IMG/VR virus record: IMGVR_UViG_3300044641_007115
Coordinates: 62,001 to 126,000 of that record
Length of the DNA: 64,000 nt
Strand: one strand, 5' to 3'
In this document: in pieces, positions 1 through 36,245 of the stretch
Position numbering within the stretch: position 1 is the stretch's first letter
Layout of the letters: each line of letters starts with the position of its first letter
Notes under the pieces: generated by a model
What the model was told of the DNA's origin: nothing
Database searches by the model: none
What the model saw: only the letters and a program-made list of their open reading frames with translations
Position numbers and translations under genes: made by a program

Positions 1-572
1 ATGAAGCTATGTCCTTTGCCACCCGGATGGTGTGCGAAGAGATCGGTGGATGCAAGTTCGCATACACCCAAAGCGACGAAGCCAGCTTTCTTGCCACCGA
101 CTACGATACACACGAAACACAGATGTGGTTCGGCGGGAACAAGGCTAAGATCGAAACCATTGCGGCGTCGGCATTCACAGCGTTCTTCAACTACTCCATG
201 ATGAAGATTTCCCCTACTCTCATCGCACAGTTTGATGCCCGCGCCTTCATCATTCCAACACAGCACGAAGTCGTCAACTACTTCATTTGGCGGCAACAGG
301 ATGCCATCCGCAACAGCGTGTCGATGTTGGCCCGTCACCACTTCAGTGCCAAGCGGCTACACAAAGTCTCATCGAAAGATGCTATCGACCTCTTGCGTAA
401 AGAGAAGAAAGTTCGGTGGGAAGAAGATACCCCTGCATGGTTCCGCCGGGGAACTGCCCTCTACAAAAAAGCACCGGGCCGTCACAAAGTCCCAAACTGG
501 TATACTGACAAAAACATCCCGGAGTTCGTCGGGAATCAAAATTTCGTGCGGCAACATATGCCTATCGAATAA
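1..572 (+). CDS. tRNA(His) guanylyltransferase Thg1-like protein (5' part cut by window edge)
   Basis: Thg1/TLP motifs YTQSDE, FDARAF, YFIWRQQDAIRNS, WFRRG. Confidence 0.9.
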   Translation, partial: EAMSFATRMVCEEIGGCKFAYTQSDEASFLATDYDTHETQMWFGGNKAKIETIAASAFTAFFNYSMMKISPTLIAQFDARAFIIPTQHEVVNYFIWRQQDAIRNSVSMLARHHFSAKRLHKVSSKDAIDLLRKEKKVRWEEDTPAWFRRGTALYKKAPGRHKVPNWYTDKNIPEFVGNQNFVRQHMPIE

Positions 573-1596: not shown

Positions 1597-1911
1597 TTAG
1601 ACTGCGATTTTCTTACTCATCGCACTCATAATTTTATCGTAACTAGTGAAGGCATCAATTTCCTTTTCGGTCGCCGGACGGACATTCACCTGACCATCCA
1701 CCTTTTGCACCGTGAAGATTCCGCGCGGGTCCTTAAGTTCGACGACTACCGATTGACGTTCCGCCAAAAGCCGGTGAAGCGCCGCCAACATAATTCGCCC
1801 CGTCGCACCCTGATCCAACGCAACGGAAGGTCCACTGTTTGCACTCATTGTCTGTTCTCCTGTTTGCCCAAATTTGGGGTCACCAGTATACTTAGACACA
1901 CTATTCGACAA
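1597..1911 (-). CDS. hypothetical protein
   Basis: ORF tightly coupled to neighbours in a minus-strand run. Confidence 0.6.
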   Translation of the reverse strand: MSNSVSKYTGDPKFGQTGEQTMSANSGPSVALDQGATGRIMLAALHRLLAERQSVVVELKDPRGIFTVQKVDGQVNVRPATEKEIDAFTSYDKIMSAMSKKIAV

Positions 1912-3100
1912 TCAGGCTCATCAGTGACATAGCCGCACGGGTCGTCCCGGCACGCGAAGAAACATAGAAACCGTACTGGCTCCGGGAACTCAGGAAGTCG
2001 CTGTTGACCACGCTGTTGACATCATGCCAATGCACACCGTTCATGGAGATACGGAAGACCCGATCCGCTCCATCGTCTTGGATCTGGAACCAGATCGGCT
2101 GAGCCACCAGACCATACGATGTCGTGAAATATGTCGAGTCAACTGTTGTTTCGTTCGTCCATTTGGTGCCCACCGCACGCAACCATGTGCTTGATCCGAA
2201 GGATGCGCCATAAGTCACAATCCTGCTGTCCGTGCTGTTCCGAAGGAAGATGCCACACTCAGCGGGCGTAGAACCCGTCAGGTATGGATAGAAGGCCGCT
2301 GTGATCTTCCACGGGGCCGCGCTGAGCGATGCTTGCATCAGACGAAGGTTCTCCGACGCTTCCGCCGCCACGGTGTCGATAAACACTCCACCAAGCGAAC
2401 TGGAAGAAACCGCCGATCCGCCTTGGTTGATCCATGAGAACGATCCAAAATTCGGTGTCTCGAACTTCACCAGCGGGCCGAATGATTCGTAGGCAGAACC
2501 CGTTGACCGACGCAAACCGAAACCGGTGCCGGGCAATACCACGCGGCCAGTATTTCCAGTTGCCGGGGAAGGCGCACTTCCATACGCCGTCACGGAAACT
2601 GGATGATCCCACGACCGGCCCGTTGATCCGTCTGTAGACAGGAACCTACCAGCATTGCCACTGGCAGTCGGTAGAAGAGCCGTCACGTCAATCGCAACAC
2701 TGGACGCTGTGGTGATGATACCCTTGGACGACACCTGAACCTGTGCGACCGTCGTGCCGCTTCCATAAGTCGCGCCCGTGACGCCGGAATCGTTTAGATC
2801 GACCGTCGTCTGGTCGTTGCCAGAATCATCCGTCAGAGCGAACCCGGAAGAGAAATTGATCCGGGAACGCTGAGTGAAGGGTGTACCGGCGCGCCGCAAA
2901 GTCTGATATCGAATATCAGTGATATTGGCGATGGTGTGGGTGTGTCCCTCTTTCGACATGGCAAAACCGCCCACTGTCGAGTTGTCGTGAAGGACAAGTG
3001 TCCATTTTGTAGTGTCAACAGTGATTTCGCCAGCCGCGCCGGTAAAGGCGCTGTGGTTCGCAGTTGTACCGCGTCGAAATTGAATCGTGATGCCAGCCAT
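1901..3100 (-). CDS. tail fibre / receptor-binding protein with Mtd_N-like N-terminus
   Basis: N-terminal IQFRRGTTANHSAFTGAAGEITVDT..LHD..TVGG; Ser/Thr/Gly-rich shaft; beta-rich C-terminal domain. Confidence 0.75.
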   Translation of the reverse strand: MAGITIQFRRGTTANHSAFTGAAGEITVDTTKWTLVLHDNSTVGGFAMSKEGHTHTIANITDIRYQTLRRAGTPFTQRSRINFSSGFALTDDSGNDQTTVDLNDSGVTGATYGSGTTVAQVQVSSKGIITTASSVAIDVTALLPTASGNAGRFLSTDGSTGRSWDHPVSVTAYGSAPSPATGNTGRVVLPGTGFGLRRSTGSAYESFGPLVKFETPNFGSFSWINQGGSAVSSSSLGGVFIDTVAAEASENLRLMQASLSAAPWKITAAFYPYLTGSTPAECGIFLRNSTDSRIVTYGASFGSSTWLRAVGTKWTNETTVDSTYFTTSYGLVAQPIWFQIQDDGADRVFRISMNGVHWHDVNSVVNSDFLSSRSQYGFYVSSRAGTTRAAMSLMSLIVE

Positions 3101-9368: not shown

Positions 9369-9680
9369 TCAGGCTACGGTCCAGACATCCCGCTGATGGT
9401 AGTAATTGCCAATCGCGGACAGAACCGGAGTCAATTCCTTCCGAAGTGATGAAAGATTTACCGACTCCCGGACATCCAGTGTTACGTCCACGATAGCGAT
9501 CTGTGATGTCGTTGGACTCCGATCAATCCACGGGCCGGGCACACGGAACTTCCGTCGAACGAAATTTCCATACCCCCGGTCAAACTTTCCGATGTAGACA
9601 GTCGCATACGGATCAGTCGGTTTTGAAAGAACTGGAATCGCCGCGACGATTGGCAGAGCGAACAATTGCCGTCGTGTCAT
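9369..9680 (-). CDS. hypothetical protein with twin-arginine-like signal (MTRRQLFAL)
   Basis: true start likely 9680, 5 nt after TCTAAGTA. Confidence 0.55.
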   Translation of the reverse strand: MTRRQLFALPIVAAIPVLSKPTDPYATVYIGKFDRGYGNFVRRKFRVPGPWIDRSPTTSQIAIVDVTLDVRESVNLSSLRKELTPVLSAIGNYYHQRDVWTVA

Positions 9681-9907: not shown

Positions 9908-11566
9908 TTAGGCGGTCGTGACTTCCGTTTCGTCTTCCGATCCCGAACGGCGGCTGGTGCCACCGCGCATGAAATCGGCCAACAGAACCGGCACGTTGGC
10001 GTCGAAACCAACGAAGTCCATCATACCCATATCCTTCGGATCGGCGATGGAGAACGGCGTCGCCGCCGTTGCGATGACGGCCAGCTTCGCGTTCGGCTTA
10101 TTCCGTTCCTTGCGGTACTTCACAAGCGCTTGCGACGGCTGGATGCTACCGGCCCAAGTTTCGTTGTCCGTGATTACCGTGAAGCAATCGACGTTCAAGT
10201 TGTTCTTGATGCCGTAGATCATCGGCAACGAACAATCCGTACCGCCGCCAAGACCGCGATTCGCCTTCTTCGTTGCCGATTCCAGCGTATCCTTGGCAGT
10301 GATCTTGAGATCGACGAACTGCGTGTCGAACCCACGGATGTCGTAGTTCTGTTCCGTGCGGATGAATACCATCGCTTGCGCGGCGGCAATCATCGCGTGG
10401 GTCAGAGCCGTACCATTCCAACTCATCGTCATCGAACCCGAAAGGTCGATGCCCACCAAAAGGTTCTGTCCGGTCGGCTCCACGTTGGCGAAGGTTCCGT
10501 AGAACGCATCCATCAACGCATCGACAACCGCCGGAACCACCGTCCACGAACCGTTACCACGCTGACCGTGACCGGCACCATAGGTACCGTAGGCCAGCAA
10601 CACCTGAAGCGGGTGGACCCGCGACCGGCGCAAGTATTCGGCATCGCGCAACCGGCTGGCGACCAGCTTGGAAGCATCAGACAGCGGGGCCAACAGGCCA
10701 GACTTCGACATGTTGCCCAAGTTGCGGATCATCGCAGTCAGCGGCATCTTTTGCAAGAGCGCTTCCTGAACCGTCGCGTCGTTGAGGAACTGAGTCGGAA
10801 TCATTTCGCGCGTCAAACCGTAGTCGGACACGATCTTGATGACTTCCTTGGCCGAAGTTGCCTTCTTTGCCAACTCAACGCCGTCGATCACGCGGGACAC
10901 GTCCGGCTTGTACTCACCCTTGGCCGCGTAACGGTAGATCGCGGAGCGAACTTCGTCTTCCGGCTTCGGGTGCGCCAAACGGAGAATGTCGCGCTGTGCC
11001 CATCCTTCACGCTGTTGGTACTTCGCCAACTGGTAGGCCAGATCGCGGGGCGACTTGGCAGAATACCAGTCCTTCACAGCACGGGCCAGAACAGCACCCC
11101 AACCGCGAAGCGAAGTTGCGTAGGAAATGAACGAAAACAGATGCGTGCCCGTGCGCGCGACCACCGGCAACTTGGACGCCGCGTACTGGCGCGTCTCAAT
11201 GACCGGGGAGTCGGTCGGGGACATGGCAAGTGCCAGCGCAAACAACGCCGGATCGTTCTTCGGTGCCCGGCCCGCGTCGCTGATGCCAGCGATCACATCG
11301 ACCGTGCGCTTACCGTCTTCCTTCAGACAGGCGATCACGTTCTTCGCGTGTTCGCGGGTCAGCTTTTCCGCCGAACCACCACTTGCGTAGTAGGCCGGGT
11401 TCTCAGACCCAAGGATCAGGAAGCGCTCCAAGAGCGTCCACTTATCGACGGTGAAAACGAATCCACCGTGGGCGTTCTGCGCCATTTCATTCTCACGTCC
11501 CGGAATCGGCTGATTCTGCGGGGTCGTCTTCCGGCTTGCGCCGTGCAAGCTATAGATGTTTGCCAT
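9908..11566 (-). CDS. rsr: Ro60 / TROVE-domain RNA-binding protein (Rsr orthologue)
   Basis: NAHGGFVF, LERFLILGSE, RTGTHLF, KYQQREGW, ALIRNLG-like AMIRNLG, RVHP, vWA DLSGSM, GGTDCSLPM, ITDNETW, DFVGFDA; start M8 after AAGAGG. Confidence 0.95.
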   Translation of the reverse strand: MANIYSLHGASRKTTPQNQPIPGRENEMAQNAHGGFVFTVDKWTLLERFLILGSENPAYYASGGSAEKLTREHAKNVIACLKEDGKRTVDVIAGISDAGRAPKNDPALFALALAMSPTDSPVIETRQYAASKLPVVARTGTHLFSFISYATSLRGWGAVLARAVKDWYSAKSPRDLAYQLAKYQQREGWAQRDILRLAHPKPEDEVRSAIYRYAAKGEYKPDVSRVIDGVELAKKATSAKEVIKIVSDYGLTREMIPTQFLNDATVQEALLQKMPLTAMIRNLGNMSKSGLLAPLSDASKLVASRLRDAEYLRRSRVHPLQVLLAYGTYGAGHGQRGNGSWTVVPAVVDALMDAFYGTFANVEPTGQNLLVGIDLSGSMTMSWNGTALTHAMIAAAQAMVFIRTEQNYDIRGFDTQFVDLKITAKDTLESATKKANRGLGGGTDCSLPMIYGIKNNLNVDCFTVITDNETWAGSIQPSQALVKYRKERNKPNAKLAVIATAATPFSIADPKDMGMMDFVGFDANVPVLLADFMRGGTSRRSGSEDETEVTTA

Positions 11567-11604
11567 GTTATTTTGACCTCTTTTCAAACACTACACCGTG
11601 TTAA

Positions 11605-12276
11605 CTACTCCTGTTCATCTTCCAAACTACGCATCACGTCTTCGAAAGGCACCAGTTCGGCCCGGCCTTCTTCCACTTCATTGATGCGTTCCTTCATCTC
11701 TGCCAGAAACTCTTCGTTCTCTTTAGGACCGCCGTGAAAGCTGATATCCCAATAGATTCCTTCCAGAAATTCCAACAGACTGAGAACTCTTTTGCCGCTG
11801 AGAATTGATTCCGTCCAGTTCCGGCGGATCGTAAACGTCTCATCGATCACAACCGGGATATGCGCCAACTGGTACATCGGTGAGTACGAAACCGACCAAC
11901 GTTCTCCTTGCGCATCCACTCCAATGAAGTCCGTCGAAATGTTGAAATCATTCGTGCCATCATGCTCGAAAACTTCACCGTAGGAACTGACAACCAATTT
12001 GACCAGCGATTCTTCCAGATCCTTACGTGGCTCACGGGCCTGTGCATGGAATTCATCGATTGCCCCACACCATGCATAATGTGCAACAACTTCCTTGAGA
12101 GTCGGATGTTGATCCACAATCGCAAAAATCTGACCCAAAGTCACGCCGTCGTCAACCTTAACCCGAACTCGAAGATCGGTCAGGCGAAACGGCTTTTCGA
12201 CGTAATCCTTCTTTTCCTTTCCATCCCACTCATACGCCGCTAGGCGGTCGCTGTGGAACACAACGTAATCACTCAT
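11605..12276 (-). CDS. hypothetical phage protein
   Basis: 223-aa ORF in operon with Ro60. Confidence 0.75.
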   Translation of the reverse strand: MSDYVVFHSDRLAAYEWDGKEKKDYVEKPFRLTDLRVRVKVDDGVTLGQIFAIVDQHPTLKEVVAHYAWCGAIDEFHAQAREPRKDLEESLVKLVVSSYGEVFEHDGTNDFNISTDFIGVDAQGERWSVSYSPMYQLAHIPVVIDETFTIRRNWTESILSGKRVLSLLEFLEGIYWDISFHGGPKENEEFLAEMKERINEVEEGRAELVPFEDVMRSLEDEQE

Positions 12277-12713
12277 GTTGGTTCGTATATCTCCAGCCCC
12301 GGTATGAAACCAAGGGAATCCACAATCATGGGTCTAACGACAGACCATTGAAGTCCGCCTAAGCCACAACCGATGGCCGGGATCGCAAGACTCGAAATCT
12401 CATGATCCTTGCACCAGTCAACAAGGACCACCAGACCAGCTTCAATCCACTCTATCTTCGAGGGGTTTCGCCAATGATCCTTGGTCGCAAAGCAGACGAC
12501 CCATTTTGGCGGTGGGGTGGTGTCATGCTGAGGCAACACGATGATGTTGCCCGGAAAAAGCGTTTTTGGTTCAGCACAAGCATGACGATATGAATTTAGC
12601 ACACCCGGAAACCGATTTGCAAACTTTTTTGCAAGACCGGCTCCCATCACTCCCACACAGTTCACCGGGTTGACCCAAACCTGTGCTTGGGACCGGAACA
12701 TATCGCCCGGCAC
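12273..12713 (-). CDS. macrodomain ADP-ribosylglycohydrolase (DarG/TARG1-like)
   Basis: GD.F, NPVNCVGVMGAGLA, FATKDHWR, IPAIGCGLGGL. Confidence 0.9.
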   Translation of the reverse strand: MPGDMFRSQAQVWVNPVNCVGVMGAGLAKKFANRFPGVLNSYRHACAEPKTLFPGNIIVLPQHDTTPPPKWVVCFATKDHWRNPSKIEWIEAGLVVLVDWCKDHEISSLAIPAIGCGLGGLQWSVVRPMIVDSLGFIPGLEIYEPT

Positions 12714-16292: not shown

Positions 16293-16847
16293 ATGCCAAT
16301 GGACACTACAGCCGAACAACTCATCGGCATCATCAAACGCCAGCCTTCGAACCCCAACTTTTTGAATGCTCATCGTTTTCGGATGGTTCTTCATCGCACG
16401 CCGTCGATGATCTACTTCATGCAAGAAGTCAACCTTCCGGGAATTTCCACTGGTGCGCCGATTCAACCAACGCCGTTTGTGGACATCCCGCATCACGGCG
16501 ACAAGCTGGTGTTTGAAGATTTGACGGTGAGTTTCGCTATCGATGAGGACATGAAGAATTACAGGGAAATCCAACAGTGGTTGTATGGATTGACCTTTCC
16601 GCAACGGTTCGAACAACATGCCGATCTTGTGCAAGGAATGCATAACCGGTACTCCGATATTCTACTGGTGATCCTCAACAGCAACTACAATCCACAACAC
16701 TACGTCATGTTCCGTCAGGCGTGGCCGTCTTCGCTTGGATCGATCCAGTTCAATTCGAAGGATCAGGACGTGGTTGTACAGCCGGTTTCTGTCACATTCA
16801 AGTATGCGTATTATGAATTTTTGGATATCGGCGACGTGTCATCATAA
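16293..16847 (+). CDS. gp3: tail completion / sheath stabiliser (T4 gp3-like)
   Basis: NFL...F...QEVNLPGIS, GDKL.FEDL..F.IDEDMKNY; position upstream of uvsY. Confidence 0.85.
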   Translation: MPMDTTAEQLIGIIKRQPSNPNFLNAHRFRMVLHRTPSMIYFMQEVNLPGISTGAPIQPTPFVDIPHHGDKLVFEDLTVSFAIDEDMKNYREIQQWLYGLTFPQRFEQHADLVQGMHNRYSDILLVILNSNYNPQHYVMFRQAWPSSLGSIQFNSKDQDVVVQPVSVTFKYAYYEFLDIGDVSS

Positions 16848-16880: not shown

Positions 16881-17459
16881 ATGCTCGAAACAATGCTGGC
16901 TCTAACGGGCCTTGCGTTTTGGACGGTTGCAATCGGCACCGTCATTTTCTGTCTCATCATTATGGCCTTGGTAGAGTACAACCGGCCATTTTGGGCGACG
17001 ACCCTGATGATCGTCACGATCAGCGGATTGGTGTTCGTTACCAAGTACCCGCTGTGGGACGAAATCCGTGCAAACCCTCTTTTGCTGGTCTACTGGACCA
17101 TCGGCTATTTGCTGATCGGTGCCGGTTGGTCTTTATTCAAGTGGTGGCGGTACGTGGATCGGACTGTCAAGCGTTGGTCGAAGAGCGACTATTCCGGTCA
17201 TAAGCGAAATCTGGAAATGATTCGGTCAGCGGATTCAGATTCTACGGTCCAACTGCCATCGGAAATTGATCCGGGGAACAACAAGGATCGTTTCTTCGGC
17301 TGGACCTTATACTGGCCCTTCTCCGGGATCTGGACATTACTGGATGATCCGCTCCGGGCGGCGTTTGAGTTCATGTATGAACAGTTTGGTCAAATCTATA
17401 CCAAGATCGCTCAGCGTGTGGCCCGGCGGATCGCTTCGAGTGTCAAACTGACATCCTAA
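16881..17459 (+). CDS. multi-pass membrane protein
   Basis: three N-terminal TM segments; Y..IGAGWS.FKW; W.LYWPFS. Confidence 0.75.
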   Translation: MLETMLALTGLAFWTVAIGTVIFCLIIMALVEYNRPFWATTLMIVTISGLVFVTKYPLWDEIRANPLLLVYWTIGYLLIGAGWSLFKWWRYVDRTVKRWSKSDYSGHKRNLEMIRSADSDSTVQLPSEIDPGNNKDRFFGWTLYWPFSGIWTLLDDPLRAAFEFMYEQFGQIYTKIAQRVARRIASSVKLTS

Positions 17460-17467
17460 ACACGAAC

Positions 17468-17938
17468 ATGGTACTGGAAGACTACGCGGCTCTGGCAGAC
17501 AAAGAGCTTCGGATTGATGTGACGCGGCTTGTCGAAGAAGCCGCGTCCATCGCCTATCTCCACGGTCGGTGGATGAAGTTCTACGAAGAAGAGAAGAGGC
17601 AATTCCGCCGGATGAAGCGGGAAGTCGCCAAGATGTACACGAAGCGGTTCAACTTCTATCGCGGCACCGGCGACCCTGATGATTTTCCGAATGAGCGCCC
17701 GCCGGATTTGATTCTCGATACATCCATGAAGACCGGCACGAAGAAGCGTAGCCATACGCCGGTCAACGTGGTCGAAATGTACATGGAATCCGACGATCTG
17801 TATCAGGACATGAAAGACAAGCTGGAAGATCAAGAAGTTCTTTTGGACTATCTCGAACAATGTCTCAAGGGTATTGCCTTCCGCCGGAACCAGATCGATA
17901 CCATCAACGAAACCCGCAAGTTCGAGTTTGGAAGGTGA
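17468..17938 (+). CDS. uvsY: recombination mediator UvsY
   Basis: size, FY.G motif, C-terminal R..QI...I...KF..G; synteny with uvsW. Confidence 0.85.
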   Translation: MVLEDYAALADKELRIDVTRLVEEAASIAYLHGRWMKFYEEEKRQFRRMKREVAKMYTKRFNFYRGTGDPDDFPNERPPDLILDTSMKTGTKKRSHTPVNVVEMYMESDDLYQDMKDKLEDQEVLLDYLEQCLKGIAFRRNQIDTINETRKFEFGR

Positions 17939-18035
17939 GCATGGGTGGATTGTTCAAATCAGTGACGGGCTTACAGTGTTGGGGATTGATGTTCTTCTCT
18001 TTTTGCATGGGATTATTGGTAGCGAAGGTGTTTTC

Positions 18036-18251
18036 ATGAGTGCATTCTATTTCCACTTCAACAAACCAGCCACACAGCGCGCCGGGAAAGTGCAAGTCAG
18101 TCTGCACTACAAAGACACTTGTCATGTGATCGATAACATTGACTGTCGCGTGCCCGTGCGCGGGCGCATACGCAAGACTCAACCCCGGTTTGTCATGGCC
18201 GGGAAAGCGAAGTCCGTTCGCTTTGAAGATGGCGTGGCGGTGATCGAATGA
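18036..18251 (+). CDS. hypothetical phage protein
   Basis: MSAFYFHFNKP...QPRFVMAGKA; overlaps the next start. Confidence 0.7.
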   Translation: MSAFYFHFNKPATQRAGKVQVSLHYKDTCHVIDNIDCRVPVRGRIRKTQPRFVMAGKAKSVRFEDGVAVIE

Positions 18252-18571
18252 AAGTCTACCAAGACCCGGTATACCGGTTCAATTTCGACAAGATGACCCG
18301 CCGGGACATGTGGGCCTTTTTGTTGATGCTGGTGACGGCTCCGTCGCTGGCCGTTCAAGCGTGGAAGATGTACAAGGCACCGAAGACGGTTGCCAGTGCA
18401 TTGATGGTTGGCTACAAAGGAACAACTCCATTTGAAGCCGGTTTCTTCTATGCGCCATACATTCCGCTGCAAATGGTTTCGCCCATTCCTACGACAAAAC
18501 CGCCGGTGGCGTTCAAAACTCGATACGGAACATATTCAGGTTCGAGTTACTATAGAAAGGTACAGCTATGA
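18248..18571 (+). CDS. mini-protein carrying a T4 gp23 major-capsid C-terminal segment behind a Tat/TM-like leader
   Basis: VGYKG.TPFEAGFFYAPYIPLQMV...P.VAFKTRYG is the gp23 C-terminal signature. Confidence 0.75.
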   Translation: MKVYQDPVYRFNFDKMTRRDMWAFLLMLVTAPSLAVQAWKMYKAPKTVASALMVGYKGTTPFEAGFFYAPYIPLQMVSPIPTTKPPVAFKTRYGTYSGSSYYRKVQL

Positions 18572-18831
18572 AGAAACTGTTTCTGATTCCTCTTCTTATC
18601 CTTGCCGGGTGCGCCACGACTCCCATGCAAACCCTCTCTACCAACAACCCGGAGTTGCAGATCGATGTTGTCGGTAAAGCGGATGGATGTACCATATATC
18701 GTTTTCGCGACGCCGGTAAGAACCACTATTTTGTCAAGTGTATCGAAGGCACCGCGCAAGCCATGTCGATGCAATCATGCGGTAAGAATTGTCAGTATGA
18801 GGATCGCATTCAGACCGTAACCACGCACTAG
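18568..18831 (+). CDS. small lipoprotein
   Basis: MKKLFLIPLLILAGC lipobox; DGC.IYRF.D. Confidence 0.75.
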   Translation: MKKLFLIPLLILAGCATTPMQTLSTNNPELQIDVVGKADGCTIYRFRDAGKNHYFVKCIEGTAQAMSMQSCGKNCQYEDRIQTVTTH

Positions 18832-18874: not shown

Positions 18875-20392
18875 GTGGTCGTCATTCGCAAAGTCAACGA
18901 ATCCTATCTTCAGGTTGACGCCGATCCCGGAATCGTTCGAGAGATCAGCGAAGTTCTAACCTTCGAAGTCCCGAACGCACATCACATGCGCCGCATGATG
19001 GAGAAGCGCGGGCGCAAGATGTACAACAATTGGGATGGGCGCATCAAGCTGTTGGACTATCGCAACGGCGCGGCCTATCTTGGTCTTCACCGTTTCATTC
19101 GTCAGTACTGCGAAGAGAACAACTATGAAGTCCAGTACGAAGACAACTTCGATTCAGAAAACCCTTTCTCCCTGTGGGAAGCCCGTAAGTTCTTCGAGTC
19201 ACTAAACCTGTCTGTACAGGGTAAACCGCTGGATGTGCGCGACTACCAAGAGCGTGCATTTGTTCACGGGGTTCAGCGCCGCCGGGCCATTCTCGTTTCT
19301 CCCACGGCGTCCGGCAAGTCGCTCATCATCTATCTTCTGTTGCGGTATCTGCAAGAGTACAAGATGGGAGACACGGGGAAAATTCTTGTCATTGTTCCCA
19401 CGACATCGCTGGTCGAACAGATGTACTCCGACTTCGCCGATTACAGCGCGGCGGACCCGAATTGGAATGTCGAAGAGAATGTCCATCGCGTCCACTCCGG
19501 GGCGGAACGAAACACCGATCTTCCAATCACTGTGACGACGTGGCAGTCCATTTATCGGATGAACGATGAGTGGTTTTTACAATTCCACGGGGTTGTCGGT
19601 GACGAAGCCCATCAGTTTGACTCCAAATCGCTCAGCAAGATTATGTCGTCGCTGGTGAACGCGGAGTATCGTTTCGCCACGACCGGCACATTGAAGGGAT
19701 CGATGGTCAATGAAATGGTGTTGGAAGGTCTGTTCGGTCAGGTCTACAACGTCACCACGACCCGCGAACTCATGGATGCTGGTACGGTCGCGGATCTGAC
19801 AATCAAAGCGCTGGTGCTCCGTTACTCCGATGAAGATTGTCAAATGGTCCGGGGTGCCGACTTCCATGCGGAGCGGGACTACATTTCCGCACACACGACC
19901 CGCCGGAACTTTGTGCGCAATCTGGTGTTGAGCCTGAAAGGAAACACGCTGGTTCTTTTCGCTCTTGTCGATAAGCAGGGGAAGCCGCTGTATGAGTCGA
20001 TCATGGAGCGGGTGGAACCGGGCCGAAAGGTCTTCTATGTCTCCGGTGAGACGGAAGCCGATGACCGGGAACAGGTGCGTCAGATCACGGAACAGGAAGA
20101 GAACGCCATCATCATTGCCAGCTACGGCGTCTTTTCGACCGGTGTCAATATCCGCAATCTGGACAATCTGGTATTCGCCGCCGGGACGAAATCGAAGATC
20201 CGTACCCTACAAAGCATCGGTCGCGGCCTTCGGAAAAGTGATCGGAAATCCACGGTGACGGTCTTCGACATCGTGGATGATTTGAGCGTTAAGTCTAAGA
20301 AAAATTTCGCCTTAATGCATTTCGCCGAACGCTTGGCGTTCTATGCGGCGGAACAGTTCCGGTACAAGATTTACCGGATCGACCTGTCGTAA
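18875..20392 (+). CDS. uvsW: SF2 DNA/RNA helicase UvsW
   Basis: WDGRIKL, SPTASGKS, DEAH, QSIGRGLR. Confidence 0.95.
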   Translation: MVVIRKVNESYLQVDADPGIVREISEVLTFEVPNAHHMRRMMEKRGRKMYNNWDGRIKLLDYRNGAAYLGLHRFIRQYCEENNYEVQYEDNFDSENPFSLWEARKFFESLNLSVQGKPLDVRDYQERAFVHGVQRRRAILVSPTASGKSLIIYLLLRYLQEYKMGDTGKILVIVPTTSLVEQMYSDFADYSAADPNWNVEENVHRVHSGAERNTDLPITVTTWQSIYRMNDEWFLQFHGVVGDEAHQFDSKSLSKIMSSLVNAEYRFATTGTLKGSMVNEMVLEGLFGQVYNVTTTRELMDAGTVADLTIKALVLRYSDEDCQMVRGADFHAERDYISAHTTRRNFVRNLVLSLKGNTLVLFALVDKQGKPLYESIMERVEPGRKVFYVSGETEADDREQVRQITEQEENAIIIASYGVFSTGVNIRNLDNLVFAAGTKSKIRTLQSIGRGLRKSDRKSTVTVFDIVDDLSVKSKKNFALMHFAERLAFYAAEQFRYKIYRIDLS

Positions 20393-21335: not shown

Positions 21336-21677
21336 ATGGCCGTTGAAACTGTTTCGACGATGATAGGGTACGATCTTCGGGATCACCGGTGGGTAGCATT
21401 TTGTCCGCACTACGATCTGGACGCGCACGACACGACAATTGAATCTAGTTGGGACCGGCTAGTCGATTTGTGCAACGGGTGGGTCGAATGGTGCCTTCTG
21501 CAAGGATTGCCGGAATTGAGCGAAACACACGCGCCTTATCTCAATGTGATTGAAGAGTCGATCAAAGAACCATATGCGACGGTGGAACTGGCCGGGTTGA
21601 GCATCGAAATGACCGGCTGGCTGATTCTGGATCGGTTGCCGGGTAATTGGCAACAGGGACGAATTCTGGACGCCTAA
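21336..21677 (+). CDS. HicB-like protein
   Basis: W.AFCP.YDL.A..TTIE.....L pattern of the HicB N-domain. Confidence 0.5.
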   Translation: MAVETVSTMIGYDLRDHRWVAFCPHYDLDAHDTTIESSWDRLVDLCNGWVEWCLLQGLPELSETHAPYLNVIEESIKEPYATVELAGLSIEMTGWLILDRLPGNWQQGRILDA

Positions 21678-21685
21678 ATGGATGT

Positions 21686-22135
21686 ATGAGTAAGAAATCA
21701 GGGGCGGCAACCGCCGCCAAAAACGAATACATCCCTCTTGACAAATTCCGTTTGGAGTTCACCAGCATTCCCGGTGTGAAGGAATTGGCTGGTATCAGTC
21801 AAAGTGTCCGACAAGTTAATCTGCCCGGCGGTGAACGTGGTAAGTCGAACACGATGATCTGTGATTCGATGACTGTGACTTTCGTAGAGACGACGGATTT
21901 GAATTTCGTCAAGTTCGTCTCATGGCTCCAAACATCATCCGGTGATCTGGCGACCGCGAAGTTGTACATTCAGAATCAATCGGAAAAAGACGTACTGTGT
22001 GTGTCTATGGAAGGCATGGAGATCACACAGGTGTGTAGTGTTAGCCTTGGCAATTCGGCCTTGATCGGAACGACTGGCAATATGGAATTTGATGTTGTGT
22101 TCCGTGTCGGACGGACCAATTACACCGTCCTCTAA
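21686..22135 (+). CDS. divergent tail tube/gp3-fold paralogue
   Basis: F.L.F..IP, V.QVNLPG, MTVTF, A.L.I.N, FDV.F. Confidence 0.5.
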   Translation: MSKKSGAATAAKNEYIPLDKFRLEFTSIPGVKELAGISQSVRQVNLPGGERGKSNTMICDSMTVTFVETTDLNFVKFVSWLQTSSGDLATAKLYIQNQSEKDVLCVSMEGMEITQVCSVSLGNSALIGTTGNMEFDVVFRVGRTNYTVL

Positions 22136-34856: not shown

Positions 34857-36245
34857 ATGATTTTACGACGGACGGACTCCTACAAGGTAGGACATTTCGG
34901 GCAATACCCGCCGGGAACGAAGATGATTCATTCGTATCTCGAAGCGCGTGGTGGCATGTTTCCACGGACTGTAGTCTTCGGAAACCGCTACTACATGGAA
35001 CGCTACATGGCCGGACAACAGGTGGATTTGCCGTCCATCGATCAAGCGGAGAAGCACGCCTATCATCACTTCGGTAACGGTGACATGTTCAACCGGGCCG
35101 GTTGGCTCCATATCCTCGAAAAGCACAAAGGGCGGCTTCCGTTGCGGATCTGTGCGCCGCCGGAAGGCACGGTGGTTCCGACTGGCAACGTGCTGATGAC
35201 CATTGAAAACACGGATGAAGCCGTTCCGTGGTTGACCAACTACGTCGAAACGATGCTCATGCGGGAATGGTACCCGTACACGGTTGCTTCGCTGAGCTAC
35301 TACTGTCGTGACATCATCCTCAAATACCTGATCGAAACCGGCACGCCGGAAGACATCTGGTTCAAGTTGCATGATTTTGGCGGACGGGGCGGATCGTCCA
35401 CGGAAACCATCGAAATCGGTGGTGCTGCCCACTTGGTCAATTTCAAGGGAACTGACACCCTCGAAGCCATCGACTTCCTGTTCCGGTGGTACGACGCCAA
35501 CTTCGAAAACTATCCGGCCTTCTCTGTCGCCGCGTCTGAACATTCCACGATGACGACGTGGGGCCAGAAACGGGAACGCGACGCTTATGCGAATATGCTG
35601 GAAAAGTATCCGACCGGCATTGTCAGCGTCGTCAGCGATTCGTGGGACATCTTCAACGCGGTAGACAAGATTTGGGGACAGGAACTCAAGGATAAGGTTC
35701 TGAACCGCAACGGGCGTGTAGTCATCCGGCCCGACTCCGGTGAAGTCATCCCGACTTTGATTGCCATTTTCCGGTCACTGGAAGCCCGCTACGGCATGGA
35801 AACGAACGCGAAGGGATACAAGGTCCTTCCGCCGCAAATTCGCGTCCTGCAAGGCGACGGCATCACGTCCTTGACCATCGAACCGATCCTTCAGGCGCTC
35901 AAGGCCGAAGGCTGGTCCGCTGACAACATCGTGTTCGGTATGGGCGGCGGTCTTCTTCAGAAGGTGGACCGGGATACCATGTCGATGGCGCTGAAGTGCT
36001 CCCGCGCCCTCATCGGCGATGAAGAGATCGATGTCTACAAGGCGGCGCGCGGTAAGGGTTCGAAGCGTGGTCGGTTGGCATTGATCGCCAATGGCGACAG
36101 CTTTAGCACGGTGCGTATCAATGAAGCGGAGATCCCCGGCAACGTTCTCAGTCCCATCTTCCTTGACGGTGACAGCACCAGCAAGCCGACCATCTACGAC
36201 ATTCGCAAACGCTCCACCCCGGCACTTCTCCGGGCGGCGGCATGA
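34857..36245 (+). CDS. nadV: nicotinamide phosphoribosyltransferase
   Basis: TDSYK..H, LHDFG.RG, ASEHS, VSDSWD, IRPDSG, QGDG, FGMGGGLLQ. Confidence 0.95.
   Translation: MILRRTDSYKVGHFGQYPPGTKMIHSYLEARGGMFPRTVVFGNRYYMERYMAGQQVDLPSIDQAEKHAYHHFGNGDMFNRAGWLHILEKHKGRLPLRICAPPEGTVVPTGNVLMTIENTDEAVPWLTNYVETMLMREWYPYTVASLSYYCRDIILKYLIETGTPEDIWFKLHDFGGRGGSSTETIEIGGAAHLVNFKGTDTLEAIDFLFRWYDANFENYPAFSVAASEHSTMTTWGQKRERDAYANMLEKYPTGIVSVVSDSWDIFNAVDKIWGQELKDKVLNRNGRVVIRPDSGEVIPTLIAIFRSLEARYGMETNAKGYKVLPPQIRVLQGDGITSLTIEPILQALKAEGWSADNIVFGMGGGLLQKVDRDTMSMALKCSRALIGDEEIDVYKAARGKGSKRGRLALIANGDSFSTVRINEAEIPGNVLSPIFLDGDSTSKPTIYDIRKRSTPALLRAAA

What the first reader, a model, noticed from the sequence alone, without database searches (positions are those of the whole stretch)
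18248..18571. Major-capsid C-terminal fragment fused to a Tat/membrane-like leader
Seen: this 107-aa ORF carries VGYKG.TPFEAGFFYAPYIPLQMV...P.VAFKTRYG, the gp23 C-terminal signature, behind MTRRDMWAFLLMLVTAPSLAVQAW. It is intact, translationally coupled on both sides, and far from any head-gene module. Established: capsid proteins trigger defences such as CapRel and Lit. Inference: a membrane-tethered or exported capsid mimic acting as an immune decoy, or a membrane anchor for prohead nucleation.
Basis: partly seen in the sequence, partly recalled or inferred. Interest (0 to 1): 0.8.

Follow-up and report, generated by a model that had tools for sequence, protein, structure and literature searches.

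The report
Exported capsid-fragment mini-protein of phage
A lake-water T4-like phage carries a small, conserved gene that joins a twin-arginine (Tat-type) export or membrane leader to the last ~55-65 residues of its major capsid protein. It belongs to an undescribed family of such "leader plus head-protein piece" genes whose job is unknown, most plausibly envelope-targeted molecular mimicry.

Summary
ORF 18248..18571 (107 aa) matches Pfam Gp23 above threshold (residues 40-100, aligning to T4 gp23 434-479). It sits behind an RR-hydrophobic leader and overlaps both neighbours by ATGA.

It is not a relic or a split gene:
- dN/dS is 0.18 (0.08-0.20 across pairs).
- The same phage has an intact 444-aa gp23 in a normal gp20-21-22-23 module about 80 kb away.

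It belongs to a broad metagenomic family. About 24 clusters among the 150 best representatives have the form Tat-type leader + YKG..DAGxFYxPYIPLQ..FKTRYG. The twin arginine is invariant in 33 aligned members, and several members hit Tat-signal HMMs. No copy was found in 50,697 isolate phage genomes or in cellular genomes.

The same phage group carries sister mini-genes with related leaders. One is fused to a portal (gp20) motif, another to gp23's N-terminal Gol-equivalent motif. The gene evolves fast and is destroyed in a close relative. Its neighbours encode exported proteins, including a weakly Cor-like lipoprotein.

The function is inferred only: an envelope-targeted mimic or decoy of linear head-protein motifs (about 0.3). 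Membrane nucleation, dominant-negative exclusion and lysis or envelope signalling remain open.

The parts
18248..18571 (+). The mini-gene: a 107-aa ORF made of a leader plus a gp23 C-terminal fragment. The stop TGA lies at 18569-18571.
   Evidence: The exact protein occurs on at least 14 metagenomic contigs. Omega is 0.18 against P0002.
18248..18292 (+). N-terminal extension, residues 1-15 (MKVYQDP..FNFDK). It is conserved only within the close subfamily. P0006 starts at Met16, so translation from 18293 cannot be excluded.
   Evidence: Alignments A1 and A3. A GGTGA sequence lies 5 nt upstream of 18248; there is no SD-like sequence before 18293.
18293..18367 (+). Tat-type / membrane leader, residues 16-40. 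It has the twin arginine R18 R19, a hydrophobic core ending in Pro32, then A-V-Q-A and W-K.
   Evidence: R18 and R19 are invariant and P32 is at least 90% conserved in 33 sequences. Hydropathy. AF2 predicts a helix with pLDDT ~80-86. Relatives hit the TAT_signal and TIGR01409 models; the window ORF itself does not.
18401..18535 (+). gp23-derived core, residues 52-96. Two retained blocks, (V)GYKG..EAGFFYAPYIPLQ and FKTRYG, are joined by a variable linker.
   Evidence: Aligns to T4 gp23 434-479. It is 63% identical (30/48) to the phage's own gp23 residues 369-416. Column conservation in minis versus real gp23.
18536..18568 (+). C-terminal tail, residues 97-107, ending in YYRKVQL. It corresponds to the native C-terminus of gp23.
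   Evidence: BLASTP against the ACP17 MCP runs to residue 407 of 411. The own gp23 ends ..PYYRLVKVINLT.
18036..18251 (+). Upstream 71-aa ORF (MSAFYFH..), with its stop overlapping the mini-gene start (ATGA). Function unknown.
   Evidence: Omega 0.043 against L129. It is truncated in relatives that lost the mini-gene.
18568..18831 (+). Downstream 87-aa lipoprotein (lipobox LILAGC), with its start overlapping the mini-gene stop. It gives a weak Cor-like hit.
   Evidence: Pfam DUF4884 E=0.0078, below cutoff. PHROG 1119 Cor superinfection exclusion protein, E=5e-4.
17468..17938 (+). UvsY, the conserved left flank of the insertion slot.
   Evidence: Pfam UvsY E=4e-18. The flank is the same in L009, L129 and L019.
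18875..20392 (+). UvsW helicase, the conserved right flank.
9369..9680 (-). A second mini-gene in the window with the same kind of leader (MTRRQLFALPIV..), 103 aa. Its passenger is of unknown origin.
   Evidence: No Pfam, PHROG or PADLOC hit and no tblastn hit.

Best explanation
WHAT IT IS (shown; about 0.9). The ORF is a functional stand-alone accessory gene of a ~225-230-kb freshwater T4-like phage. It arose by fusing a twin-arginine (Tat-type) signal or membrane leader to the last ~55-65 residues of a T4-type major capsid protein. It is a paralogous fragment, not the capsid gene and not a piece of a split capsid gene.

It belongs to an undescribed modular family. A related leader (MTRR-x-[ML]-[FW]-A.. 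/ RRxFFxAL.APF..) carries one of several passengers: the gp23 C-terminal motif, the gp23 N-terminal Gol-equivalent motif, a gp20 portal motif, or unknown passengers.

HOW IT MOST LIKELY WORKS (inferred; about 0.3).
- The leader sends the peptide to the cytoplasmic membrane or Tat translocon. In most family members it passes into the periplasm after cleavage at an A-x-A site. In the window subfamily, whose hydrophobic core is followed by W-K-x-Y-K-x-x-K, it may stay tethered.
- The passenger cannot fold alone. It is a linear, beta-strand-forming copy of the most conserved capsid motif.
- It would act as a molecular mimic: a competitive decoy or bait for a host (or rival-phage) factor that recognises conserved linear motifs of unassembled head proteins. 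The known precedents for such recognition are Lit with the Gol peptide, and CapRel.
- It operates together with the co-translated exported neighbours as an envelope-located accessory module.
For: It is a real gene under selection:
- Exact copies occur in many lake metagenomes.
- Six close homologues (52-97% identical) are all intact and 105-121 aa long, and where the locus is known they lie in the same UvsY-UvsW slot.
- Omega is 0.18 at unsaturated dS. At the same time dN is 6-30 times that of the flanking genes.

Family and leader:
- phmmer against 1.84e9 representatives gave 211 hits. About 24 of the best 150 clusters are 68-130-aa proteins with textbook (S/T/N)RRxF(L/F) leaders followed directly by the gp23 C-terminal motif.
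- R18, R19, G65, Y68, Y71, P73 and L74 are invariant in 33 sequences.
- 33/33 hit Pfam Gp23, 6/33 hit Pfam TAT_signal, and 5/33 hit TIGR01409 (best E 7e-6).

It is not a split gene. The own gp23 is intact: 444 aa, covering profile positions 2-376 of 376, in a gp20-protease-scaffold-gp23 module.

The architecture is modular:
- An RR-leader + gp20 motif mini-gene lies in the same genome.
- A leader + gp23 95-135 (T4 numbering) mini-gene lies in sister phages, with a second member, P0166.
- Leaders resemble each other across passenger types.

The passenger is a linear motif:
- AF2 gives a confident leader helix but a disordered passenger.
- Minis keep only two short blocks and lose the linker that is invariant in real gp23.

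Envelope context:
- The adjacent genes encode a lipoprotein (weakly Cor-like), a DPBB lipoprotein plus a secreted protein, and a signal-peptide protein.

Arms-race signature:
- Evolution is fast.
- A relative with 86-90% nucleotide identity in the flanking genes has lost the gene but carries the gp23-N mini instead.
- The gp20 mini is truncated in some lineages.

Precedent for sensing short capsid motifs: Gol/Lit (PMC3014915). Lit and CapRel detect the MCP through short motifs, and the MCP and portal are sensed by several Avs families (bioRxiv 10.64898/2026.01.04.697583).
Against: - No partner or sensor was identified.
- No PADLOC or anti-defence family hit was found.
- Known capsid and portal sensors are cytoplasmic, whereas a cleaved Tat substrate ends up in the periplasm.
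- A Gol-like peptide would be expected to activate, not block, a Lit-type protease.
- The window ORF itself does not reach any Tat-signal HMM, and its motif is T-R-R-D-M-W rather than S/T-R-R-x-F-L-K.
- The flanking charges (about +2 before, +3 after the hydrophobic core) leave its topology ambiguous.
- The minis do not track their own phage's gp23 closely. The own gp23 is only marginally the best real match for the C-mini (62% against at most 60%), and ranks 28th for the N-mini.
- No transcript evidence: no RNA run was listed.
Confidence: 0.32

Rival explanations
1. Dominant-negative 'capsid poison' or exclusion factor. The fragment inserts into, or caps, folding or assembling gp23 of a co-infecting or superinfecting T4-like phage, or times the phage's own assembly. 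The leader keeps it at the membrane, where T4-type proheads are initiated.
For: - The retained residues are exactly the core strands that pack against the rest of gp23: own-gp23 model strands at 366-372, 383-386, 404-410 and 413-416.
- The passenger is disordered alone.
- The sister minis carry portal and gp23-N motifs, that is, several assembly partners.
- The next gene is weakly Cor-like, which suggests an exclusion theme.
- The window subfamily has a basic cluster after the hydrophobic core, compatible with a cytoplasmic passenger.
Against: - Most family members have canonical cleavable Tat signals with acidic mature N-termini, so their passenger would leave the cytoplasm.
- The motif is 63% identical to the phage's own gp23, so self-poisoning would have to be avoided.
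- There is no direct evidence.
Confidence: 0.15
2. Periplasmic or envelope effector or signal unrelated to capsid mimicry, such as an RI-like lysis-timing or antiholin peptide, a superinfection-exclusion helper for the adjacent lipoprotein, or a modulator of envelope stress or Tat traffic. The capsid piece was simply convenient beta-hairpin raw material.
For: - The size and layout (weakly hydrophobic leader plus a ~60-aa domain) resemble small phage periplasmic regulators (from my own knowledge of T4 RI).
- It is translationally coupled to a lipoprotein with a weak Cor hit.
- Exported neighbours occur in three contexts.
- Minis have long branches and lose much of the gp23 pattern.
Against: - Three independent passengers are all the most conserved motifs of head proteins (gp23-C, gp23-N, gp20). 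That is hard to explain if capsid identity is irrelevant.
- The two retained blocks stay close to the gp23 consensus over large divergence.
Confidence: 0.15
3. Membrane anchor that nucleates or tethers prohead assembly.
For: - T4-type heads start on the inner membrane (established knowledge).
- The phage group has leader-fused pieces of both portal and capsid protein.
- The W-K-x-Y-K after the hydrophobic core looks like a membrane-interface motif.
Against: - The gene is destroyed in a close relative that keeps a normal head module.
- It is absent from all 50,697 isolate phage genomes searched, including the many T4-like ones among them.
- Its accessory-island context and fast evolution do not fit a core assembly factor.
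- Canonical Tat signals in most members imply export.
Confidence: 0.07
4. Non-functional relic of a rearrangement or partial duplication of gene 23 that happens to stay open.
For: - The site is next to gp23's ancestral position, gp23-gp3-UvsY-UvsW.
- One relative shows an inverted, permuted remnant there.
- Homing endonuclease genes are common in these genomes.
Against: - Omega is 0.08-0.20 in all pairs.
- Intact ORFs persist down to 35% identity.
- The RR is invariant, and the leader is not derived from gp23.
- Translational coupling is conserved.
- The family occurs in unrelated large phage contigs at other sites.
Confidence: 0.03
5. Trans-complementing C-terminal piece of a split major capsid gene.
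For: The ORF ends with the native gp23 C-terminus.
Against: - The own gp23 is full length, with its own C-terminal motif and tail.
- The mini carries a leader.
- A sister phage with an identical gp23 C-terminus lacks the mini.
Confidence: 0.01

Closest known systems
T4-type major capsid protein gp23 (Pfam PF07068; PDB 5VF3, 6UZC, 7VS5)
   Same: ORF residues 52-96 are homologous to T4 gp23 434-479 and to residues 369-416 of the phage's own gp23 (63% identity). The ORF keeps the native C-terminal YYR-x-V end.
   Different: - Only ~15% of the fold is present.
- The N-terminal 40 residues are a Tat-type leader unrelated to gp23.
- The linker that is invariant in real gp23 is free to vary.
- The gene lies 80 kb from the head module.
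- The passenger is predicted disordered on its own.
Gol peptide of T4 gp23 and the Lit protease (e14) abortive-infection system
   Same: A short linear stretch of the capsid protein is biologically active on its own. A sister mini-gene (L040 12451..12705) carries the region aligned to T4 gp23 95-135. That region lies in the first quarter of gp23 and is its most conserved part, as described for Gol (PMC3014915).
   Different: - Gol is part of full-length gp23, not a separate gene, and has no leader.
- The window ORF carries the C-terminal motif, not the Gol motif.
- No Lit-like partner was identified here.
- The exact residue numbers of Gol are from my memory, not from a tool.
Bacterial twin-arginine (Tat) signal peptides (Pfam PF10518, TIGR01409)
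   Same: - The RR is invariant.
- The h-region is moderately hydrophobic and rich in Gly/Ala/Thr, ending in Pro.
- Many members have A-x-A.
- 5-6 of 33 members reach the HMMs.
   Different: - Here the leader is attached to a ~55-aa unfoldable capsid fragment in a virulent phage.
- The window ORF's own motif (TRRDMW) is non-canonical and gives no HMM hit.
- The leader sequence is conserved across different passengers, which is unusual for signal peptides.
Small phage envelope proteins: Cor/Llp exclusion lipoproteins and T4 RI antiholin
   Same: All are small exported accessory proteins of virulent phages encoded in plastic regions. The gene overlapping the mini's stop is a lipoprotein with a weak Cor-family hit.
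   Different: The mini has no sequence similarity to any of them. None of them is built from a virion protein fragment.
Phage anti-defence proteins that neutralise trigger-sensing immunity (for example DSAD1 against DSR2)
   Same: The proposed logic is the same: a small accessory protein interferes with a sensor of a conserved virion protein (PMC11087589).
   Different: No such protein described in the papers I could search is a fragment of the sensed protein, and none carries an export signal. The function here is untested.

Membership tests
T4-type major capsid protein (PF07068 Gp23) | Sequence match to the family profile above the curated threshold | tested here: met
   46.8 bits against a cutoff of 24.4, E=3.8e-12. 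33/33 family members match.
T4-type major capsid protein (PF07068 Gp23) | Full-length HK97-type subunit covering the whole profile (~400-520 aa) | tested here: not met
   Only profile positions 291-353 of 376 are covered, and the ORF is 107 aa. The own gp23 covers 2-376.
T4-type major capsid protein (PF07068 Gp23) | Encoded in the head module after portal, prohead protease and scaffold | tested here: not met
   The ORF lies between UvsY and UvsW. The true module gp20-S77 protease-T4_CASP-gp23 is about 80 kb away on contig IMGVR_UViG_3300044641_007115.
Tat (twin-arginine) signal peptide | Twin arginine in an S/T-R-R-x-F-L-K-like motif near the N-terminus | tested here: inconclusive
   The RR is invariant in 33 sequences. 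The window ORF has T-R-R-D-M-W and reaches no Tat HMM. 6/33 hit PF10518 and 5/33 hit TIGR01409, best E 7.4e-6.
Tat (twin-arginine) signal peptide | Moderately hydrophobic h-region followed by a c-region with a small-x-small cleavage motif | tested here: met
   Kyte-Doolittle maximum 1.53 over residues 21-39. Pro32 and A-V-x-A are conserved in the subfamily. Many relatives have A-x-A followed by acidic residues.
Tat (twin-arginine) signal peptide | Tat-dependent translocation and cleavage in vivo | not testable with these tools
   Needs reporter fusions in wild-type and tat-mutant laboratory strains.
Decaying pseudogene / gene relic | dN/dS near 1, frameshifts or stops in homologues | tested here: not met
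   Omega 0.18 (dS 0.87), and 0.08-0.20 in the other pairs. All six close homologues are intact. One lineage has lost the gene outright.
Split capsid gene (C-terminal piece supplied in trans) | The resident gp23 lacks the corresponding C-terminal segment | tested here: not met
   The own gp23 (L218 15531..16865, 444 aa) contains the motif and the tail.
Capsid-trigger decoy / anti-defence protein | Binds or blocks a host sensor of the capsid protein and rescues the phage from it | not testable with these tools
   No PADLOC hit. No partner known. Only indirect support: fast evolution, turnover, and sister minis with Gol-like and portal motifs.
Cor-type superinfection-exclusion lipoprotein (applies to the neighbouring gene 18568..18831, not to the ORF) | Profile match plus lipobox | tested here: inconclusive
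   Lipobox LILAGC is present. PHROG 1119 E=5e-4 covers only residues 1-52 and may be driven by the signal sequence.

The most novel reading that the evidence does not exclude
Large environmental T4-like phages possess a modular toolkit: a conserved twin-arginine leader cassette that repeatedly captures short, immutable linear motifs of the phage's own head proteins. The captured motifs seen so far are the capsid C-terminus, the capsid Gol-region and a portal helix. The cassette delivers them to the membrane or periplasm as decoys or baits against host (or rival-phage) factors that recognise unassembled head proteins. This would be a new class of counter-defence or exclusion device made from virion-protein fragments.
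Probability: 0.25. Interest if true: 0.9.

Novelty: categorically new. Interest (0 to 1): 0.78.

Why it matters
Conserved virion proteins are now known to be major triggers of bacterial immunity. Capsid and portal are sensed by Lit, CapRel and several Avs families. How large virulent phages cope with sensors of proteins they cannot mutate is largely open.

A widespread, selected family of small genes that fuse an export or membrane leader to exactly those immutable motifs would be one of two things. It could be a new counter-measure, or a new way for phages to use capsid fragments in the cell envelope for exclusion, lysis timing or assembly control.

It is directly testable with simple constructs in laboratory T4/E. 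coli systems. It also warns annotators that short 'Gp23' or 'portal' hits in phage genomes are not always pseudogenes or assembly errors.

Tried and rejected
1. Megablast of the region against 50,697 phage genomes gave no match. The phage is uncultured.
2. tblastn of the ORF and of P0022 against isolate phages hit only full-length capsid genes. The one near-full-coverage hit (Pantoea phage Phynn) is its real 521-aa gp23.
3. ESM Atlas look-alikes were uninformative: scores under 0.75 and stored-model pLDDT of 0.35.
4. Finding the true gp23 by pattern scans failed. Patterns from A1 found only minis.
5. The upstream walk found about 45 kb of accessory genes followed by gp2/gp48/hub genes, but no head genes. 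The downstream walk finally reached gp20-gp23.
6. The look-up of window 9..572 failed because the gene call on record is longer.
7. The genome-contig scan returned 80 loci, all real gp23 on phage contigs binned into MAGs. It found no mini and gave no host clue.
8. RNA evidence: no RNA run was listed. Laying contigs of four lake runs showed only identical sequence and no variants.
10. Concerted evolution with the resident gp23 is not supported. The own gp23 is only marginally the best real match for the C-mini and ranks 28th for the N-mini. The 78% nucleotide identity over 77 nt is what conserved codons alone would give.
11. A strictly single origin of all minis is not rejected (p-AU 0.64) but is not shown either. 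P0051 is up to 82% identical to real cyanophage-type gp23.
12. The weak gp20 hit in L046 (E=0.009) is spurious. That ORF belongs to the tail-tube family.
13. Literature searches for Tat leaders on capsid fragments, capsid decoys, or second truncated g23 copies found nothing relevant.
Full report
OBSERVATION. ORF 18248..18571 (+) encodes 107 aa exactly as quoted. Residues 40-100 match Pfam Gp23 (PF07068) at E=3.8e-12, 46.8 bits against a curated cutoff of 24.4, on profile positions 291-353 of 376. PHROG 138 'major head protein' gives E=7.7e-11. Against PDB sequences, residues 52-95 align to T4 gp23 434-479 of 521. BLASTP with the Acidovorax phage ACP17 capsid protein is colinear from residue 19 to the last residue and reaches that protein's native C-terminus. 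With Pelagibacter phage HTVC008M the core is 53% identical. Residues 16-40 (MTRRD..AVQAWK) form the hydrophobic leader, with a Kyte-Doolittle maximum of 1.53 at residues 21-39. The start overlaps the stop of a 71-aa ORF (ATGA at 18248-18251). The stop overlaps the start of an 87-aa lipoprotein gene (ATGA at 18568-18571).

GENOME CONTEXT. The window (52% G+C) is from an uncultured T4-like phage. There is no megablast hit in 50,697 phage genomes, and UvsW is at most 47% identical to any isolate. The region reads as follows:
- tail-tube-like gene, 184 aa;
- membrane protein, 192 aa;
- UvsY;
- 71-aa ORF;
- the mini-gene;
- lipoprotein;
- UvsW;
- gp55-like sigma factor;
- gp47 and gp46;
- then the replication genes (DNA polymerase, UvsX, gp41, primase, NrdA).
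Upstream lie about 16 kb of accessory genes: Thg1, an Mtd_N protein, dUTPase, Hsp20, DUF2786, TROVE/Ro60, Macro. In HTVC008M and ACP17 the order is gp20-21-22-gp23-(x)-gp3-(x)-UvsY-(x)-UvsW-gp55-gp47-gp46. The fragment therefore lies far from head genes in this genome but close to gp23's ancestral neighbourhood. The exact ORF is present on many contigs from lake-water metagenomes sampled 2016-2024, including contigs of 133, 157, 185, 224 and 231 kb.

THE PHAGE'S OWN gp23. I walked along the IMG/VR contig that carries the identical ORF (IMGVR_UViG_3300044641_007115, 224,490 bp) and found the true head module about 80 kb downstream:
- portal gp20, 642 aa, Portal_T4 E=3.5e-171;
- S77 prohead protease;
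- T4_CASP scaffold;
- gp23, 444 aa, Pfam Gp23 positions 2-376 of 376, E=2.5e-141.
The capsid gene is complete and includes the C-terminal motif and tail. This rules out a split gene. Treating this contig and the window as the same phage is an inference. It rests on 100% identity of every gene used in the walk. The mini's residues 52-97 are 63% identical (30/48) to own gp23 369-416. In a 50-column core the own gp23 is the best real match, but only marginally: 62% against a median of 54% and a maximum of 60% for 87 other gp23.

A FAMILY, NOT A ONE-OFF. A length-restricted search found six stand-alone homologues (105-121 aa, 52-97% identical), all carrying the Gp23 domain. Those whose loci I fetched lie in the same UvsY-UvsW slot. 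An unrestricted phmmer search of 1.84 billion cluster representatives gave 211 hits. Besides full-length capsid proteins and frameshifted assembly fragments, about 24 of the best 150 clusters are 68-130-aa proteins. Their N-termini are textbook twin-arginine leaders (for example NRRSFLRG.., SRRAFLKG.., SRRGFLGT..), followed directly by (V)GYKG..DAGxFYCPYIPLQ..FKTRYG.
- In a 33-sequence alignment the invariant positions are R18, R19, G65, Y68, Y71, P73 and L74. P32, Y56, K57, G58, P70 and R92 are at least 90% conserved.
- All 33 hit Pfam Gp23, 6 hit Pfam TAT_signal, and 5 hit TIGR01409 (best E 7.4e-6).
- The window ORF's own leader (TRRDMW) is a derived form and reaches no Tat model.
- Distant members sit in accessory regions of a 170-kb T4-like contig and a 375-kb contig, never beside head genes.
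- No stand-alone copy exists in the isolate phage collection or among the best 80 hits in 185,579 cellular genomes.

SELECTION AND TURNOVER. The NG86 estimates for the window against L129 (P0002) are dN 0.158, dS 0.866 and omega 0.18. Other pairs give 0.08-0.20 at saturated dS. In the same genome pair, UvsY has dN 0.005, UvsW 0.010 and the 71-aa ORF 0.028. The gene is therefore constrained, yet its protein evolves 6-30 times faster than its neighbours.
- Compared with real gp23, minis keep two blocks, YKG..(D/E)AGxFY(C/A)PYIPLQ and FKTRYG. They lose the MVRAVG..TFQPKIG linker and the NP motif, which are 84-99% conserved in capsid proteins.
- On a 110-row, 50-column tree the minis cluster: 3 label changes against 25 in shuffles. 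Monophyly is not rejected (p-AU 0.64). Their terminal branches are 0.7-1.5 against a median of 0.044. The alignment is short, and P0051 is up to 82% identical to real gp23, so repeated capture cannot be excluded.
- In three contigs of a relative whose flanking genes are 86-90% identical in nucleotide sequence, the gene is gone. Only nt 18256-18318 and 18143-18165 survive. Both pieces are inverted and in permuted order, and the upstream ORF is truncated.

SISTER MINI-GENES. The walk uncovered the same architecture with other passengers.
- (a) In the same genome, L036 1295..1582(-) encodes 95 aa beginning MTRRNLFAV... A possible lipobox follows, and then a stretch colinear with gp20 portal residues ~259-321. 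This stretch is 43% identical to HTVC008M gp20 over 42 aa and 34% to the own gp20 over 67 aa. All 67 tblastn hits in phage genomes fall in portal genes (best E=2e-4). PHROG portal gives E=0.0025, and Pfam Portal_T4 gives E=0.015, below its cutoff.
- (b) In sister phages, L040 12451..12705(+) encodes 84 aa, inserted right after a ClpP gene. It consists of a leader (MTRQAFFITLL..) followed by a segment aligned to T4 gp23 95-135 (E=3e-9). A second member, P0166, has a full RR leader. This is the part of gp23 described as the Gol region: 29 residues in the first quarter, the most conserved part, which binds EF-Tu and activates the Lit protease (PMC3014915). That the residue ranges coincide is my recollection of the Gol numbering.
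- (c) Window 9369..9680(-) encodes 103 aa beginning MTRRQLFAL.., with a passenger of unknown origin.
The leaders resemble each other across passenger types: MTRR-x-[ML]-[FW]-A within this genome, and RRxFFxAL.APF...R.FP between P0008/P0113/P0148/P0154 and P0165/P0166. The contig that lost the gp23-C mini carries the gp23-N mini, and the gp20 mini is truncated in two lineages.

STRUCTURE. AF2 on the family alignment predicts the leader as a helix (pLDDT ~80-86) and the passenger as disordered (pLDDT ~50; mean 59.8). An AF2 model of the own gp23 is of moderate quality (pLDDT 58.9, pTM 0.53). It places the homologous segment in a run of beta-strands at 366-372, 383-386, 394-397, 404-410, 413-416 and 432-441. 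The passenger is thus a strand-forming piece of the capsid fold that should not fold alone.

NEIGHBOURS.
- The gene overlapping the mini's stop is a lipoprotein (LILAGC) with a weak Cor superinfection-exclusion hit (E=5e-4, residues 1-52).
- P0051 is followed by a DPBB lipoprotein and a secreted protein.
- The gp20 mini follows a signal-peptide protein.
- None of these proteins hits PADLOC.

MECHANISM. These points are shown:
- the gene is real and selected;
- it has a Tat-type leader;
- its passenger is a capsid-derived linear motif;
- the family is modular;
- the gene turns over rapidly;
- its neighbours are exported proteins.
The rest is inferred. The leader takes the peptide to the membrane or Tat system. 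The peptide then acts as a mimic of unassembled head protein, as a decoy or bait for a factor that reads conserved linear head-protein motifs. Lit and CapRel detect the capsid protein through short motifs, and capsid and portal are sensed by several Avs families (bioRxiv 10.64898/2026.01.04.697583). I put this at about 0.3.
The main difficulties are these:
- known sensors are cytoplasmic, whereas a cleaved Tat substrate is periplasmic;
- a Gol-like peptide should activate rather than block Lit;
- no partner is known.
The window subfamily's basic cluster after the hydrophobic core (W-K-x-Y-K-x-x-K) leaves its topology open. That keeps a membrane-tethered cytoplasmic role alive, either a dominant-negative exclusion factor (0.15) or a prohead nucleator (0.07). 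An envelope effector unrelated to mimicry is also possible (0.15). A relic (0.03) and a split gene (0.01) are effectively excluded.

COMPARISON AND NOVELTY. By sequence the ORF is a fragment homologue of gp23, but it fails the features that define a capsid protein: length, fold coverage and module position. Its leader meets the compositional features of Tat signals. The HMM test is met only by relatives, and export itself could not be tested. PHROGs, Pfam and NCBIfam have no model for the family as such. Members are recognised only as 'major head protein'. Five full-text searches found no description of leader-fused capsid or portal fragments. I therefore rate the architecture as a new kind of phage gene. 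The caveats are that its function is unproven and that the literature library is incomplete.

Noticed in passing
L036 1295..1582 (-) (= L038 11179..11466; IMG/VR contig 3300044641_007115, about 45 kb upstream of the finding); L040 11059..11349 (-): A 95-96-aa ORF with an MTRRNLFAV.. / MMNRRSFFAV.. leader and a possible lipobox. It is fused to a segment colinear with portal protein gp20 residues ~259-321 and ends at the WLPR motif. It is truncated to 54 aa in two sister contigs.
   Followed up: yes
L040 12451..12705 (+) (also L041, L042; sister phages): An 84-aa ORF inserted directly after a ClpP gene. A leader (MTRQAFF..) is fused to the gp23 N-terminal motif that aligns to T4 gp23 95-135, the Gol-equivalent region. 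It is absent at that site in the window's phage. A second family member, P0166, has a full RR leader.
   Followed up: yes
window 9369..9680 (-): A 103-aa ORF beginning MTRRQLFALPIV.. with the same leader type. Its passenger has no detectable relative in Pfam, PHROGs, PADLOC, isolate phages, or the ~150 kb of this genome that I read. A further RR-leader ORF of 137 aa lies at L046 16581..16994.
   Followed up: partly
L019 5990..6090 (also L018, L020), compared with window 18143..18318: In close relatives the mini-gene is replaced by an inverted, permuted remnant. Window nt 18256-18318 are joined to nt 18143-18165, the latter a short GC hairpin-like piece (GCCCG-TGCG-CGGGC). The rest of the mini-gene and the 3' end of the upstream ORF are deleted. 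The order of the pieces is not what a simple inversion gives, which hints at a circular or tandem intermediate.
   Followed up: partly
window 18248..18292; L009 10250..10318: The N-terminal MKVYQDPVY of the ORF resembles the gp23 strand motif (R)YKV(F/Y)xDPY that precedes GYKG in real gp23. It also resembles the C-terminal ..RFKVYQDPYFRKVKIG of homologue P0006. From memory, it further recalls the T4 internal-protein capsid-targeting sequence MKTYQEF. This may be chance or a trace of a former tandem copy.
   Followed up: no
window 18568..18831 (+): An 87-aa lipoprotein, translationally coupled to the mini-gene, with a weak match to the Cor superinfection-exclusion family (PHROG 1119, E=5e-4) and to DUF4884 below cutoff.
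   Followed up: partly
window 1901..3100 (-): A 399-aa protein with an Mtd_N domain (the N-terminus of the major tropism determinant, which is the target protein of diversity-generating retroelements) and a tail-protein PHROG hit. I did not look for a reverse transcriptase or template repeat.
   Followed up: no
window 9908..11587 (-), 12273..12713 (-), 9..572 (+), 34857..36245 (+); L036 1944..2537; L211 11501..12091, 17078..18295, 19348..20210: An unusual accessory load for a T4-like phage: TROVE/Ro60 with a vWA domain, a Macro domain, Thg1-like tRNA-His guanylyltransferase, NAMPT, ClpP, ferritin, adenylosuccinate synthetase and a protein kinase. TROVE and Macro also lie next to the distant mini P0008 on a 375-kb contig (L034).
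   Followed up: no
L218 9029..10957: The true portal protein is 642 aa, about 120 aa longer than typical gp20. It has a highly acidic C-terminal extension (runs of D/E).
   Followed up: no
P0009 (222 aa, metagenomic representative): A protein that begins with a gp23 C-terminal-like segment and continues with a segment resembling the central spine-helix region of gp23. The order is permuted. It may be a fusion or an assembly artefact.
   Followed up: no
window 16293..16847 (+) and 21647..22135 (+); L044 11553..12422: Several gp19/tail-tube-family paralogues are scattered outside the tail module. One lies just upstream of UvsY, where relatives have gp3.
   Followed up: no
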